Positions 52,382 to 54,358 of a stretch of 64,000 nucleotides of DNA are shown here, in pieces. Made by a program: the position numbers and the translations under genes. The stretch spans positions 1-64,000 of the IMG/VR virus record IMGVR_UViG_3300009430_000004. The stretch is one strand, 5' to 3'. Every line of letters starts with the position of its first letter. Position 1 is the first letter of the stretch. The notes below the pieces were generated by a model. That model worked only from the letters and a program-made list of their open reading frames with translations. It was not told the DNA's origin and made no database searches.

Positions 52382-54358
52382 ATGTTTAAAAAAATGTATA
52401 AGCTCAAAATACGAGCAAAATTAGTATTAACAACTTTGATAATTTTAACAGTAGCATTAGTATCAGTTTCATCGGTGAGTTACTTTGTATTTAAGGATAG
52501 GTTGCAAGATAAAATAATGCAATCTCTTGGTACAATCACTGTAGATAGAGCCGAATTTGTGAAGAGTTGGCTAAGTAAATTGGAATATATAAGTGTGGTC
52601 AATTTTGTGACAAATAACGATAACGATAGTGTTGATATTGCGGATTTACACCTGAGTAAAATAGATTCCACGATATTAACATCCTTTATATTCTTTAATG
52701 ATGGTAATTTAATTGATGCAAATGGGTGGAAACCTGACCCTGGTACTGATTTAAAACAAATGAATTGGTATAAAGTTGGTATATCGTCCAATAAACCAAC
52801 TTATTTATTAGATAGGGATTTAAAAACAAATAATGTTTCAGTATTCTGTGTAAGGCAGTTTACCGATAAAAACGGAAATGTAAAAGGGGTAATTGCTCAG
52901 ATATATGATTCTAATGTATTTAACACTATGGTCGCTTCATTAAGAGCCGAAGGTGACGGATATGGATACATAGTGGGAAAAGGACATATATTAGCACATC
53001 CTGATAAATCACTTGTTGGTAAAACAGTTGAGGATGCTGGCGTTGCAATAGCTAATGAATTAGTTGCTAATTTAGGTACTCCTATTCACTATGAATTCAG
53101 AAATGTTAAGAAATATGGTGTTGCTGTAAAAATACCTGATATGCAGGATGCGTATCTTATAATGGCTGTACCAGATGAAACTGTTTTAAAACCATTAGAT
53201 AACGTGGACCTATATATGATTGGAATATCATTATTATTTTTACTATTGGCATCAATAACATTTTCGATAATGTCAACTAGGATATCAAACCCTCTAGTTA
53301 AGAGTAGTGAATTGTTGGGGCATATAGCTTTGGGAGACTTTACTAGAGATACTGATTCTGCCGATTTAAATATTCCTGATGAAATAGGAGATATAAATAG
53401 GTCTGTTGATAAAGTTAAGAAATCGCTTATAGGAATTATAAAAGAACTTAAAAGTAGCAGTAATATATTATCTCATGATGCTCAGTCACTGAGTGCAACT
53501 GCTACACAGAGAACTTCTGGTTTACAACAAATAAGTGTTAGTTGTAACGAAATGGCTGCTGGTATACAAGTATTGGCTGATAATAATCAAGAGAGTGTTG
53601 CATCATTGACAGATCTCAGCTCTCTATTAGATAAGGCTAATGAAATATCTAGTGGCATGGTTGACAGGGTAGTTATTGCCCAGCAAAAAAGTAATATCGG
53701 GTTATCAGTAATGAAAGAATTGATGGATGACAATTTAGTAGTAAACGCTGCTGTTGGAAATATGAATACAACGGTTGCTGATATTTACGAAAAATCAAAT
53801 AAGATAAAAGATATACTGGAAATTATTAATAATATTTCTGGTCAAACAAACCTCTTGGCTTTGAATGCTTTAATAGAGGATGCTAAGATAAAAGAAAACA
53901 ATGGTTTCTCAGTTATTGCTAATGAGATAAAGAAACTTTCGGATCATACAAAATTAGAAAGTGCTAATATTTCATCAAAACTTAGTGAGATAACTGTTGG
54001 TATTGAGAAATTAGTTGAGTATTCATCTAAATTTGATAGTACTATGAAGGAGCAGACTGGTACAATAAACTTGTCTAATGAATCATTTAAGAATATTTCT
54101 GACTCAATTGATGAAGTTATTCAGTTAACAAATAAACTTAAAGATATTGTAATCAATATTGATGCAAATAAAGTAACCGTATTAAGTATGGTTGAAAATA
54201 ATGCTAGTTTAACAGAAGAGTTTTCTGCCAATATACAAGAAATAACAGCTTCTGTTGAACAGAATCTTGCTGGAAGCGAAGAAAATCTTAATACTATTAA
54301 AAAGCTTGATAAACTAAGTAATGGATTACTTGCTATTGTAGAAAAATTCAAAATATAA
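52382..54358 (+). CDS. Methyl-accepting chemotaxis protein (TM-dCache-TM-HAMP-MA)
   Basis: [10 protein letters not shown]1; [19 protein letters not shown] (Cache); TM2; HAMP (GDFT..DEIGDI); [22 protein letters not shown]. Confidence 0.92.
   Translation: [658 protein letters not shown]

What the first reader, a model, noticed from the sequence alone, without database searches (positions are those of the whole stretch)
52382..54358. Phage-encoded full-length chemoreceptor under a late promoter with a remodelled CheA/CheW tip
Seen: a complete TM-dCache-TM-HAMP-MA receptor preceded by the phage late promoter (52337-52348), so it is wired into phage transcription rather than being a host contaminant. 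The hairpin tip reads [33 protein letters not shown] against the near-invariant [34 protein letters not shown]. It is one residue shorter, has lost U-turn glycines and carries A-to-L and A-to-D changes. Established: this tip mediates trimer-of-dimers and CheA/CheW contacts. Inference: a dominant-negative or locked-state receptor that biases swimming of infected cells, or a sensor repurposed for lysis timing. No other che genes are in the window.
Basis: partly seen in the sequence, partly recalled or inferred. Interest (0 to 1): 0.7.

Follow-up and report, generated by a model that had tools for sequence, protein, structure and literature searches.

The report
Jumbo-phage chemoreceptor with rewritten tip
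An uncultured 218-kb groundwater phage carries a complete bacterial-type chemotaxis receptor as a late-expressed accessory gene, and its kinase-control tip, normally almost invariant, is uniquely rewritten, which suggests the phage tampers with how infected cells swim.

Summary
ORF 52382-54358 (+) encodes a 658-aa transmembrane receptor: dCache_1 sensor, HAMP-like linker and a 44H-type signalling hairpin. It lies in a complete AR9/PBS1-like jumbo phage with split multisubunit RNA polymerases.

The late-promoter claim holds as a motif. AACA-N6-T[A/G], AR9's published late consensus, precedes 75 of 223 genes in sense orientation (12 antisense; 22.8±4.6 in shuffles), including sheath, major head and terminase. 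The receptor gene has a good copy 45 nt upstream and a strong terminator hairpin downstream. No transcript data exist.

Four independent assemblies carry the gene in the same context, so the contig is not chimeric.

The tip is a real outlier. In 369 homologs the Q-to-F spacing is always 23 (22 here), and G390 and G393 are near-invariant (both lost here). The CheW/CheA-binding N-helix face, F396, the heptad register and the methylation motifs are retained.

None of 24 related phage records has an MCP. The gene sits in a hypervariable slot, and no other che gene is present.

Phage-borne MCPs with canonical tips already exist, so this is a new variant of a known kind.

The dominant-negative or locked-state idea is plausible but untested. 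The intact sensor argues against a mere poison, and the lysis-timing idea has only adjacency behind it.

The parts
52300..52314 (-). Early-type promoter motif. Read on the minus strand it is AAATTTATATATTAT, with core TATATATTAT at 52300-52309. It drives the divergent leftward genes 51929-52234 and 51669-51935.
   Evidence: It matches the core of AR9's early consensus AAATATATATTAT-N6-G (PMC5312081). ATATATTA(T) is about 8-fold enriched upstream of genes in this genome. The motif lies 75 nt upstream of the start of 51929-52234.
52337..52349 (+). Late-type promoter motif AACAAAATATTA plus the following A. By analogy with AR9 the predicted transcription start is the A at 52348.
   Evidence: AR9's late consensus is AACA-N6-T[A/G], with the last base as the start site. 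In this genome the motif is present in sense orientation within 100 nt upstream of 75 of 223 genes, against 12 antisense and 22.8±4.6 (max 36) in shuffles. It peaks 20-50 nt before start codons and precedes the sheath, major head and terminase genes. An extra A after the TA occurs in 53 of 66 sites, and this site has it.
52370..52376 (+). Shine-Dalgarno sequence GGAGGGG, five bases (52377-52381) before the ATG at 52382.
   Evidence: Read directly from the sequence. GGAGG-type words are the most enriched upstream 8-mers in this genome.
52382..54358 (+). Chemoreceptor (MCP) gene, 658 aa.
   Evidence: The AF2 model has mean pLDDT 83.9. The best Foldseek matches are B. subtilis McpB/McpC full-length models at E 4e-31.
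52421..52489 (+). TM1 (about aa 14-36).
   Evidence: Hydropathy peak. It lies within helix 10-76 of the AF2 model.
52490..53206 (+). Extracytoplasmic dCache_1 ligand-binding domain (about aa 37-275). The ligand is unknown.
   Evidence: Pfam PF02743 at 1.9e-15. PDB sequence hits are CtaA (6pxy, 2.7e-8) and PctA (5ltx). The fold matches CtaA and PctA with TM about 0.77. The carboxylate-binding Arg of PctA (RSRPWY) is Met here (KQMNWY).
53207..53275 (+). TM2 (about aa 276-298).
   Evidence: Hydropathy peak; AF2 helix 270-316.
53276..53431 (+). HAMP-like linker (about aa 299-350).
   Evidence: Aligned signature positions NPL, GDF and DEIG are present, with E334 invariant across 67 sequences. The model shows helix, connector, helix. 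It is below Pfam detection. The connector differs from homologs by a 2-residue gap and a 3-residue insertion.
53432..54355 (+). Cytoplasmic signalling hairpin of 44H type, with about 154 residues per arm. Helix 334-500, turn 501-507, helix 508-654.
   Evidence: There are no indels in either arm relative to 120 homologs, apart from the one-residue deletion at the U-turn (model).
53843..53878 (+). Tip N-helix [12 protein letters not shown] (aa 488-499, Tsr 374-385). This is the retained trimer, CheW and CheA-P5 contact face, with a single change, A383L.
   Evidence: All 11 highly conserved columns in this stretch match. The interface residue list comes from PMC13098124 Table 1. Predicted CheW contacts fall on aa 483-502.
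53879..53944 (+). Rewritten U-turn and C-helix flank [22 protein letters not shown] (aa 500-521). Changes in Tsr numbering: A386D, R388K, A389I, G390K, G393 lost with one residue deleted, V399I, R404K, A407S, E408D. F396, V398, A400, E402 and L406 are kept.
   Evidence: All 9 mismatches at columns that are at least 90% conserved fall here, in 17 of the 38 such columns. Post-hoc hypergeometric p = 1.5e-4. AF2 confidence is lowest here, with pLDDT 56 for aa 501-510.
54206..54271 (+). Three heptad-spaced methylation-type motifs: SLTEEFSA (609), ANIQEITA (616) and ASVEQNLA (623).
   Evidence: Motif scan; the same heptad-spaced triplet occurs at the equivalent place in cellular homologs.
54039..54039 (+). 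The only polymorphism seen in the gene: G in the window (Ser553), T in three other assemblies (Ile553).
54368..54403 (+). Intrinsic-terminator-like hairpin, a perfect 11-bp stem with a 4-nt loop followed by a T-rich tail, starting 10 nt after the stop codon.
51119..54439 (.). Hypervariable cargo slot between two conserved genes (48986-51118 and 54440-56371). It holds three small ORFs and the MCP.
   Evidence: Both flanking genes are conserved in five complete relatives. In three of those relatives the slot was fetched; it is 5-6 kb there, holds unrelated small ORFs, and has no homolog of any of the four genes here.

Best explanation
This is a horizontally acquired accessory gene (a moron) of one species-level lineage of AR9-like jumbo phages. 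It encodes a complete 44H-type transmembrane chemoreceptor.

Proposed mechanism:
1. The gene is transcribed late, by the phage's own non-virion RNA polymerase, from an AACA-N6-TA promoter. It is a one-gene unit closed by its own terminator.
2. The protein inserts into the membrane of the infected cell.
3. Through its retained N-helix face (Tsr Q374-A387, plus F396, V398 and E402) it joins the host's trimers of dimers and binds host CheW and CheA-P5.
4. The U-turn and adjacent C-helix set the ON/OFF equilibrium that controls CheA. They are rewritten here: one residue is deleted, both turn glycines are lost, and A386D, A389I, R388K and R404K are present. The receptor therefore feeds an abnormal, probably biased, output into the host array and changes the swimming behaviour of the infected cell.
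5. Because the sensor, the HAMP-like linker, the heptad register and the methylation motifs are all kept, that output is probably still modulated by a ligand and by adaptation, rather than being a dead plug.

Shown here: the gene, the domains, the motif-level late promoter, the terminator, the unique tip, the absence of the gene from relatives and the absence of other che genes.

Inferred: late transcription, array integration, altered kinase control and any effect on motility.
For: Family and architecture: Pfam, the AF2 model and the fold matches.

Structural constraint:
- No indels in about 300 residues of coiled coil, except one at the turn.
- 29 of 38 columns that are at least 90% conserved are retained, including every one outside aa 500-521.
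- Methylation motifs are retained.

Retained assembly face:
- The interface residues listed in PMC13098124 are conserved here.
- ESMFold2 places B. subtilis CheW on exactly these residues. The verdict is weak support only: score 0.55 against a best control of 0.01. In the tool's calibration the mark was reached by 51 of 78 solved complexes and 2 of 108 mismatched pairs, and passes at 0.60 or under are more often wrong than right unless the guess was already likely.

Output-control region changed: Tsr work shows E385 and R388 are dispensable for trimer and core-complex assembly but that nearly all substitutions there disturb CheA control (PMC6681711).

The tip variant is not compositional drift:
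- The phage proteome has 5.7% Gly, 4.9% Ala and 3.7% Arg.
- C. botulinum MCPs are even poorer in Ala and Gly yet keep canonical tips.

Phage wiring: the late motif, the terminator, and no enrichment of sigma-70-type promoters.

Accessory status: 0 of 24 related records carry an MCP, and the gene sits in a hypervariable slot.

No other che gene is present, so any signalling must run through host proteins.
Against: - There are no expression data and no RNA run was listed. The host is unknown, so host motility, its MCP class and its CheA/CheW sequences are unknown.
- All copies found are near-clonal (1-2 SNPs over 8.5-14 kb), so selection on the tip cannot be measured.
- The only relative above 31% identity is P0227, a 224-aa fragment at 44%. 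It already shares part of the variant (A383L, R388K, A389L, G393R), so some of the 'remodelling' may be inherited from an unsampled donor whose own chemotaxis proteins have co-varied.
- The complex prediction is weak, used a surrogate CheW, and may only reflect likeness to solved complexes.
- A one-residue deletion in the turn could also stop productive array integration altogether.
Confidence: 0.45

Rival explanations
1. Ordinary working receptor matched to its host. The donor and host lineage has MCPs, CheW and CheA whose tip interface has co-varied. The phage copy signals normally and simply adds a new chemical input, so that infected cells steer somewhere that benefits the phage.
For: - P0227, the only close relative (44% identical), has an intermediate tip, and both proteins are orphans from a poorly sampled lineage.
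- The sensor, HAMP, register and methylation motifs are intact.
- Other jumbo phages carry apparently normal MCPs.
- GC3 is lower than the phage mean (z = -2.0), which fits a recent origin in a lower-GC donor such as the 27%-GC P0227 contig.
Against: - The phage tip goes beyond P0227: a one-residue deletion, loss of G390, A386D and R404K.
- No cellular MCP among about 400 examined, including the most divergent ones, has the 22-residue spacing.
- Late expression leaves limited time for navigation, unless the latent period is long.
Confidence: 0.22
2. Pure dominant-negative or locked receptor. The protein jams or locks host arrays regardless of ligand and so abolishes chemotaxis. In a flagellotropic phage lineage such as PBS1/AR9, this could stop further phage adsorption to an already infected cell.
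For: - Invariant turn glycines are lost and one residue is deleted.
- In Tsr, most substitutions at 385 and 388 give shifted or locked outputs while the receptors still assemble (PMC6681711).
- PBS1 and AR9 need functional flagella to infect, and phage chi cannot infect cells whose flagella rotate only clockwise (PMC9266447).
Against: - A plug would not need a full-length receptor, yet an intact dCache sensor, HAMP-like linker, register and three methylation motifs are all maintained.
- R388K is the mildest R388 substitution in Tsr.
- Whether this phage is flagellotropic is unknown, since its major head protein is only about 26% identical to that of AR9.
Confidence: 0.15
3. A role independent of CheA. 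The MCP scaffold is reused as a membrane sensor for a phage process such as lysis timing, superinfection exclusion or polar localisation, possibly with a phage-encoded partner at the altered tip.
For: - The tip, the partner-binding end, is the part that changed.
- A membrane-anchored glucosaminidase-SH3 hydrolase lies two genes downstream and is also late.
- The genome has many proteins of unknown function.
Against: - The retained N-helix face is the CheW and CheA-P5 face.
- The methylation motifs only make sense with host CheR and CheB.
- The neighbouring genes are separate transcription units, with a terminator after the MCP.
- The neighbouring 643-aa gene is conserved in relatives that lack the MCP, so it is not a dedicated partner.
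Confidence: 0.1
4. A neutral or decaying passenger. The gene was recently picked up and has relaxed constraint at the tip because it has no functional partner.
For: - It is present in a single phage lineage, in a hypervariable slot.
- Its MCPsignal score is low (78 bits against 118-136 in other phage MCPs).
- No selection measurement is possible.
Against: - The ORF is an intact 658 aa at only 26-31% identity to any cellular MCP, with no frame or register defects.
- All conserved columns outside aa 500-521 are kept.
- It has a phage-type promoter, a strong ribosome-binding site and a terminator.
- Its codon usage is within the phage's range (z = -0.5).
Confidence: 0.08

Closest known systems
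44H-class transmembrane chemoreceptors of Bacillota with dCache_1 sensors, such as B. subtilis McpB and McpC
   Same: - Same domain order, and the same arm length of about 154 residues per arm.
- Methylation-motif triplet in the C-arm and the conserved C-terminal Phe.
- N-helix tip [9 protein letters not shown].IE and F396.
- The best fold match over the full length, at E 4e-31.
   Different: - Only 20-31% identical.
- The U-turn is one residue shorter and lacks both glycines.
- A386D, A389I, R388K and R404K are present.
- HAMP is below Pfam detection.
- It is encoded by a virulent-type jumbo phage under a phage promoter.
MCP genes of isolated jumbo phages: Vibrio phage vB_VmeM-Yong XC31, Escherichia phage A4 (Asteriusvirus), phage MaAM05; PHROG family phrog_8572
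   Same: They are phage-borne MCPs. Yong XC31 has the same dCache_1-HAMP-MCPsignal layout.
   Different: - They have canonical tips, with 23-residue spacing and both glycines, and MCPsignal scores of 118-136 bits.
- They are unrelated phages of Gram-negative or other hosts, and their receptors are less than 30% identical to this one.
- I found no functional study of any of them.
Tsr hairpin-tip mutants at E385 and R388 (PMC6681711)
   Same: The changes lie next to the turn and leave trimer and core-complex assembly intact while altering kinase control. This is the best experimental analogy for what such a tip might do.
   Different: Those are single laboratory substitutions in a 36H E. coli receptor. 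This is a natural multi-site rewrite with a deletion, and its output is untested.
AR9/PBS1 late genes transcribed by the non-virion RNA polymerase from AACA-N6-T[A/G] promoters (PMC5312081)
   Same: - The same motif at the same kind of distance.
- The same divergent early and late promoter arrangement in an intergenic region.
- The phage has split RNAP beta-like genes and the AR9-like early motif.
   Different: The major head protein is only about 26% identical to AR9's. Promoter use is inferred from motif statistics, not from mapped transcripts. AR9, PBS1 and their Staphylococcus and Listeria relatives gave no MCP match in the tblastn search.

Membership tests
Methyl-accepting chemotaxis proteins (Pfam PF00015 MCPsignal) | The signalling domain scores above Pfam's gathering threshold. 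| tested here: met
   78.1 bits against a cut-off of 34.6, E 9e-22, aa 456-597.
Methyl-accepting chemotaxis proteins | A long antiparallel helical hairpin with symmetric arms and an unbroken heptad register. | tested here: met
   AF2 gives helices 334-500 and 508-654. Neither arm has an indel relative to 120 homologs. Foldseek matches McpB/McpC, Tm1143 (2ch7) and Tsr (3zx6).
Methyl-accepting chemotaxis proteins | The near-invariant hairpin-tip consensus, including the U-turn glycines (Tsr G390 and G393) and a fixed turn length. | tested here: not met
   Spacing is 22 against 23 in 369 of 369 homologs. G390 is K here and G393 is N or a gap. Identity to the 35-aa consensus is 20, against a mean of 31.9 and a cellular minimum of 26.
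Methyl-accepting chemotaxis proteins | Methylation (adaptation) site motifs on the methylation helices. | tested here: met
   Three heptad-spaced [ASTG]xx[EQ][EQ]xx[ASTG] motifs at aa 609, 616 and 623, as in homologs. This is sequence-level evidence only; methylation itself was not tested.
Methyl-accepting chemotaxis proteins | Binding of CheW and CheA-P5 at the tip and formation of trimers of dimers. | tested here: inconclusive
   The interface residues are mostly conserved. The ESMFold2 complex with B. subtilis CheW gave weak support only: 0.55 against a best control of 0.01. The mark was reached by 51 of 78 solved complexes and 2 of 108 mismatched pairs, and the contacts fall on the canonical face. 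Trimer formation was not tested.
HAMP domain (PF00672) | A profile match, or the two-helix plus connector structure with the Pro and DExG signatures. | tested here: inconclusive
   No Pfam hit at E<=1. The aligned signatures (NPL, GDF, DEIG, with E334 invariant) and the helix-connector-helix arrangement in the model are present.
dCache_1 sensor domains (PF02743) | A profile match and the double PAS-like fold. | tested here: met
   57.5 bits against a cut-off of 45. TM about 0.77 to the CtaA and PctA ligand-binding domains.
dCache_1 amino-acid sensors (PctA and CtaA type) | The conserved Arg before the WY that binds the ligand's carboxylate. | tested here: not met
   PctA's RSRPWY aligns with KQMNWY here, so the Arg is replaced by Met. 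The identity of the motif residue is from my own knowledge of PctA structures.
AR9-type late (nvRNAP) promoters | AACA-N6-T[A/G] shortly upstream of the gene, with the motif over-represented upstream of late and structural genes of the same genome. | tested here: met
   The site is at 52337-52348, 45 nt before the ATG. It occurs in sense orientation upstream of 75 of 223 genes, against 12 antisense and 22.8±4.6 in shuffles, including sheath, major head and terminase.
AR9-type late (nvRNAP) promoters | A transcript 5' end at the motif that appears late in infection. | not testable with these tools
   There is no isolate and no RNA run was listed.
Phage morons / accessory cassettes | A self-contained transcription unit, absent from close relatives, in a variable region. 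| tested here: met
   It has its own promoter motif and terminator. None of 24 related records has an MCP above the cut-off. Both flanks are conserved while the slot contents differ.

The most novel reading that the evidence does not exclude
The phage deploys a decoy chemoreceptor. The protein still docks into the host's chemosensory array through the conserved N-helix face, but its rewritten U-turn forces an abnormal kinase state late in infection. That would reprogramme flagellar rotation of the doomed cell. In a lineage whose cultured relatives (PBS1, AR9) infect through rotating flagella, this could block superinfection and loss of progeny on infected cells, or steer the infected cell towards new hosts. 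It would be the first viral effector aimed at the bacterial chemotaxis array.
Probability: 0.25. Interest if true: 0.8.

Novelty: new variant of a known kind. Interest (0 to 1): 0.55.

Why it matters
The hairpin tip is the most conserved element of the whole chemoreceptor superfamily, and it is where receptors control the CheA kinase. This is a natural receptor that keeps everything else (sensor, HAMP-like linker, register, methylation motifs, CheW and CheA docking face, F396) but has a shortened, glycine-free turn. That makes it a ready-made probe of what the turn contributes to kinase control.

Its position in a virulent-type jumbo phage, under a phage late promoter and with no other che gene, raises a testable idea: that phages manipulate the behaviour of infected cells through the chemosensory array.

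Phage-borne MCPs are annotated in several genomes, but I found no functional study of one. This is the case where the sequence itself hints at a non-standard function.

Caveats: it is one phage lineage with near-clonal copies, the host is unknown, and nothing about function has been measured.

Tried and rejected
- Near-identical DNA in INPHARED phages: none.
- Orthologs in IMG/VR by peptide patterns from the MCP itself or from the MCP + P0227 alignment: none.
- Genome and metagenome scans with that alignment: apart from the window's own source contig, only ordinary MCPs at 24-52% identity over partial segments, all with 23-residue spacing.
- Exhaustive phmmer over 1.84 billion representatives: nothing above 31% over the full length. 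The only closer match is the fragment P0227, and P0227 is itself an orphan.
- dN/dS: impossible, because the four copies differ by one SNP in the gene.
Only the degenerate consensus is.
- Host sigma-70-type promoters: not enriched around the gene (37 found, 33.5±5 expected).
- AT-bias as the explanation for the tip: rejected.
- Chimeric contig: rejected. One search used Logan contigs, not raw reads, from a run that may be a source sample.
- HATPase_c hit as a possible CheA: it is a GyrB-type topoisomerase.
- Weak MCPsignal hit in relative G014: a repetitive coiled-coil protein, not an MCP.
- RNA evidence: none was listed.
I used the major head protein instead. One related record (L060) is not held and was not searched.
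- Literature on phage-encoded chemoreceptor function: nothing found in four searches, only annotations.
- One coordinate slip, corrected.
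Full report
WHAT IS THERE

The window is the first 64 kb of a 218,088-bp IMG/VR virus record that CheckV rates as 100% complete. The record has 33.5% G+C and about 223 ORFs by my crude caller.

The window encodes a terminase large subunit, tail sheath, major head protein, DNA polymerase, helicase, a GroEL-like chaperonin and two split RNA polymerase beta-like subunits. The nearest isolates by major head protein are AR9/PBS1 (Bacillus), the Staphylococcus jumbo phages and Listeria phage LPJP1. 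All are only about 24-27% identical. The one sequencing run listed as holding the phage is a groundwater metagenome. So this is an uncultured, deep-branching AR9-like jumbo phage, presumably of a Bacillota host.

THE GENE

ORF 52382-54358 (+) encodes 658 aa behind a GGAGGGG ribosome-binding site.
- Pfam finds dCache_1 and MCPsignal above their cut-offs.
- Hydropathy shows two membrane segments.
- An AlphaFold2 model built on 67 sequences has mean pLDDT 83.9. It shows TM1 and a stalk helix, a two-module alpha/beta sensor, TM2, a helix-connector-helix linker, and one long hairpin: helix 334-500, turn 501-507, helix 508-654.
- Foldseek's best matches are B. subtilis McpB/McpC full-length models (E 4e-31). 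Next come dCache amino-acid sensor domains (CtaA and PctA, TM about 0.77) and the Tm1143 and Tsr cytoplasmic domains.
- Pfam does not detect HAMP, but its signature residues align and E334 is invariant.
- In the sensor, the Arg that binds the carboxylate of amino-acid ligands in PctA is Met here, so the ligand is unknown.

IS IT REALLY PART OF THE PHAGE?

Yes. The same gene with the same neighbours occurs in four assemblies:
- the window's record;
- a 20.7-kb JGI contig;
- a 22-kb Logan contig;
- a 218,197-bp ENA contig whose ends lie elsewhere in the genome.

They are about 99.98% identical, and the gene carries one SNP (S553I). The Logan contig of the groundwater run covers 50500-56400 in one piece at an even depth of 11.4. 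These are contigs, not raw reads, and the run may be a source sample.

THE PROMOTER CLAIM

AR9's mapped promoters are AAATATATATTAT-N6-G (early, virion RNAP) and AACA-N6-T[A/G] (late, non-virion RNAP; the last base is the start site) (PMC5312081).

In this genome:
- ATATATTA(T) is about 8-fold enriched upstream of genes.
- AACA-N6-T[AG] lies in sense orientation within 100 nt upstream of 75 of 223 genes. The figures for comparison are 12 antisense and 22.8±4.6 (max 36) in shuffles.
- The sites cluster 20-50 nt before start codons and precede the sheath, major head and terminase genes.
- An additional A follows the TA in 53 of 66 sites.

The MCP gene has AACAAAATATTAa at 52337-52349, 45 nt before its ATG. 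The divergent leftward gene has an early-type core (TATATATTAT on the minus strand, 52300-52309). That divergent early/late arrangement is described for AR9.

Only the degenerate consensus is. Sigma-70-type matches are at chance level, and a perfect 11-bp hairpin with a T-rich tail follows the stop codon.

The gene is therefore a one-gene cassette with phage-type signals. Late transcription is inferred, because no RNA run was listed.

THE TIP

Among 369 non-self homologs with a recognisable tip:
- the distance from Q374 to F396 (Tsr numbering) is 23 residues in every one, and 22 here;
- G390 is Gly in 369/369 and G393 in 368/369, and neither is Gly here;
- A386 is never Asp and A389 is never Ile;
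- R388 is Lys in 3 and R404 is Lys in 11;
- A383 is Leu in one, P0227.

Further MCPs pulled from genomes and metagenomes all keep the 23-residue spacing. That includes very divergent ones and those that share the GFSVIANE word.

Compositional bias does not explain the change. The phage proteome uses Gly, Ala and Arg at ordinary levels. C. botulinum MCPs have even less Ala and Gly and still keep the canonical tip.

The divergence is localised. Against 120 homologs of the same length class, the cytoplasmic domain has no indel in either arm. The only differences are in the HAMP connector and the single residue at the turn. Of 38 columns that are at least 90% conserved, 29 match. All nine mismatches lie in aa 500-521: A386D, R388K, A389I, G390K, G393 gap, V399I, R404K, A407S and E408D. 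The post-hoc hypergeometric p is 1.5e-4.

The N-helix [9 protein letters not shown].IE is intact. According to the structure-based table in PMC13098124, it carries most of the MCP/CheW and MCP/CheA contacts: Q374, I377, L380, N381, V384, R388, plus A383, E385 and A387. F396, V398 and E402 are also kept.

A complex prediction used two copies of aa 455-555 with B. subtilis CheW. The verdict was weak support: score 0.55 against a best control of 0.01. In the tool's calibration the mark was reached by 51 of 78 solved complexes and 2 of 108 mismatched pairs, and passes at 0.60 or under are more often wrong than right unless the guess was likely beforehand. The contacts fall on aa 483-502, which is the canonical face. 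This shows likeness to known complexes, not binding.

[quoted passage not shown] R388K is the mildest (PMC6681711).

ORIGIN AND DISTRIBUTION

The closest full-length relatives, among 5.8 billion clustered proteins and 1.84 billion representatives, are Bacillota MCPs at 26-31% identity. The best hit by the word-index search, P0002, lies in ordinary chromosomal context.

One fragment, P0227, is 44% identical over the C-terminal third. It is 224 aa, on a 1.3-kb, 2x-coverage, 27%-G+C contig. Its tip is intermediate: [35 protein letters not shown]. It shares A383L and R388K, has A389L and G393R, and keeps the canonical length and G390. P0227 is itself an orphan. Part of the variant may therefore predate the phage copy.

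The clade of related phages is well sampled: 44 IMG/VR loci have major head proteins 30-100% identical, most of them 48-75%, and several records are 210-264 kb. None of the 24 records searched has an MCPsignal match above the cut-off, including all seven that are at least 90% complete. The single weak hit is a repetitive coiled-coil protein.

The genes on either side of the slot (48986-51118 and 54440-56371) are conserved in five complete relatives. In the three relatives whose slot was fetched, the interval between them is 5-6 kb of unrelated small ORFs, and none of the four genes found here has a homolog there.

The MCP's codon usage is within the phage's range (z = -0.5), but its GC3 is low (z = -2.0). 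The gene is thus a lineage-specific acquisition in a hypervariable slot.

No CheW, CheY-type receiver, CheR, CheB or CheD was found, and the only HATPase_c hit is a GyrB-type topoisomerase rather than CheA.

COMPARISON WITH WHAT IS KNOWN

Phage-borne MCPs are not new as annotations:
- Vibrio phage Yong XC31 has a dCache_1-HAMP-MCPsignal protein.
- Escherichia phage A4 has an annotated MCP.
- Phage MaAM05 has a protoglobin-MCP.

All three have canonical tips and MCPsignal scores of 118-136 bits, against 78 here. PHROG family phrog_8572 matches this protein. A survey of Nitrosospira phages lists MCP, CheR and CheY among morons. I found no functional study. What is new is the tip variant and its combination with an AR9-type late cassette.

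HOW IT MOST LIKELY WORKS

The most likely sequence is: late transcription by the phage polymerase; membrane insertion; entry into host receptor arrays through the retained face; then abnormal, probably still ligand- and methylation-sensitive, control of host CheA through the rewritten turn. The result would be altered swimming of the infected cell (confidence about 0.45).

The alternatives are:
- an ordinary receptor matched to an unusual host system (0.22);
- a pure locked or dominant-negative plug (0.15);
- a CheA-independent sensor role (0.10);
- a neutral passenger (0.08).

The plug idea gains some appeal from the fact that PBS1 and AR9 infect through functional flagella (PMC9266447). Whether this distant relative does so is unknown.

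The lysis-timing idea rests only on a membrane-anchored glucosaminidase-SH3 gene two genes downstream. That gene has its own late motif and belongs to a separate unit.

VERDICT

This is a new variant of a known kind, with moderate to high interest. The limits are a single near-clonal lineage, an unknown host and no functional data.

Noticed in passing
whole genome; in the window e.g. 52300-52309 (-), upstream of 22519-24519, 26391-28328, 37427-38911 and 48315-48851: An AR9-like early promoter core, (T)ATATATTAT, occurs 111 times in the genome, 91 of them intergenic, and is about 8-fold enriched upstream of genes. Together with the late motif, this suggests a two-polymerase early/late programme like that of AR9.
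   Followed up: partly
window 22519-24519 (-) and 43795-45381 (-): Two split multisubunit RNA polymerase beta-like genes (phrog_3015 and phrog_2986). The first has both an early and a late motif upstream. The second has a late motif only.
   Followed up: partly
window 34785-36500 (+): A GroEL-like chaperonin gene (phrog_5725, E 2e-90) with a late motif at -27 and an overlapping early-type core at -15.
   Followed up: no
window 48986-51118 (+): A 710-aa protein that joins an endonuclease-like N-terminal part (phrog_15137) to a C-terminal part (phrog_1128). In relatives the two parts occur in different architectures: two ORFs of 372 and 351 aa in G002, and single ORFs of 1519 aa in G007 and 1102 aa in G022.
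   Followed up: partly
window 47605-48141 (-) and 48315-48851 (-): Two adjacent 178-aa ORFs of identical length with no family match, possibly a tandem duplication. The second has an early-type motif upstream.
   Followed up: no
window 56453-57397 (+): A glucosaminidase + SH3_3 peptidoglycan hydrolase with an N-terminal hydrophobic segment, which looks like a signal anchor. It has its own late motif at -29. It is a candidate endolysin or virion-associated lysin.
   Followed up: partly
window ~57430-57490 and genome ~188914-188975: A repeated segment of about 60 nt (87% identical) carrying the same late motif context (AACAAAAAAATAattatattatta) upstream of two different genes (57491 and 188970). 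It may be a mobile or duplicated regulatory cassette.
   Followed up: no
genome ends (1-31 and 218058-218088): The record's 'direct terminal repeat' is only a 31-bp exact repeat, and an independent 218,197-bp assembly has different ends. The repeat may be an assembly overlap of a circular or circularly permuted genome rather than a true terminal repeat.
   Followed up: partly
L003 (1337-bp ENA contig holding P0227): The P0227 reading frame has an in-frame stop 21 codons upstream of its Met start, with open frame before the stop. A second, convergent ORF encodes a TM-HAMP-like fragment that ends early. These are either broken genes or errors in a 2x-coverage contig.
   Followed up: partly
window 51634-51670: A 15-bp-stem hairpin flanked by A-runs and T-runs sits between the convergent genes 51140-51634 (+) and 51669-51935 (-). 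It looks like a bidirectional terminator.
   Followed up: no
L099 1276-2496 (-) (related phage record G014): A 406-aa coiled-coil protein with a long internal duplication (the VLENQLESVQHTVDEHGEL... block occurs twice). It gave a sub-threshold MCPsignal hit and may be a fibre-like protein.
   Followed up: partly
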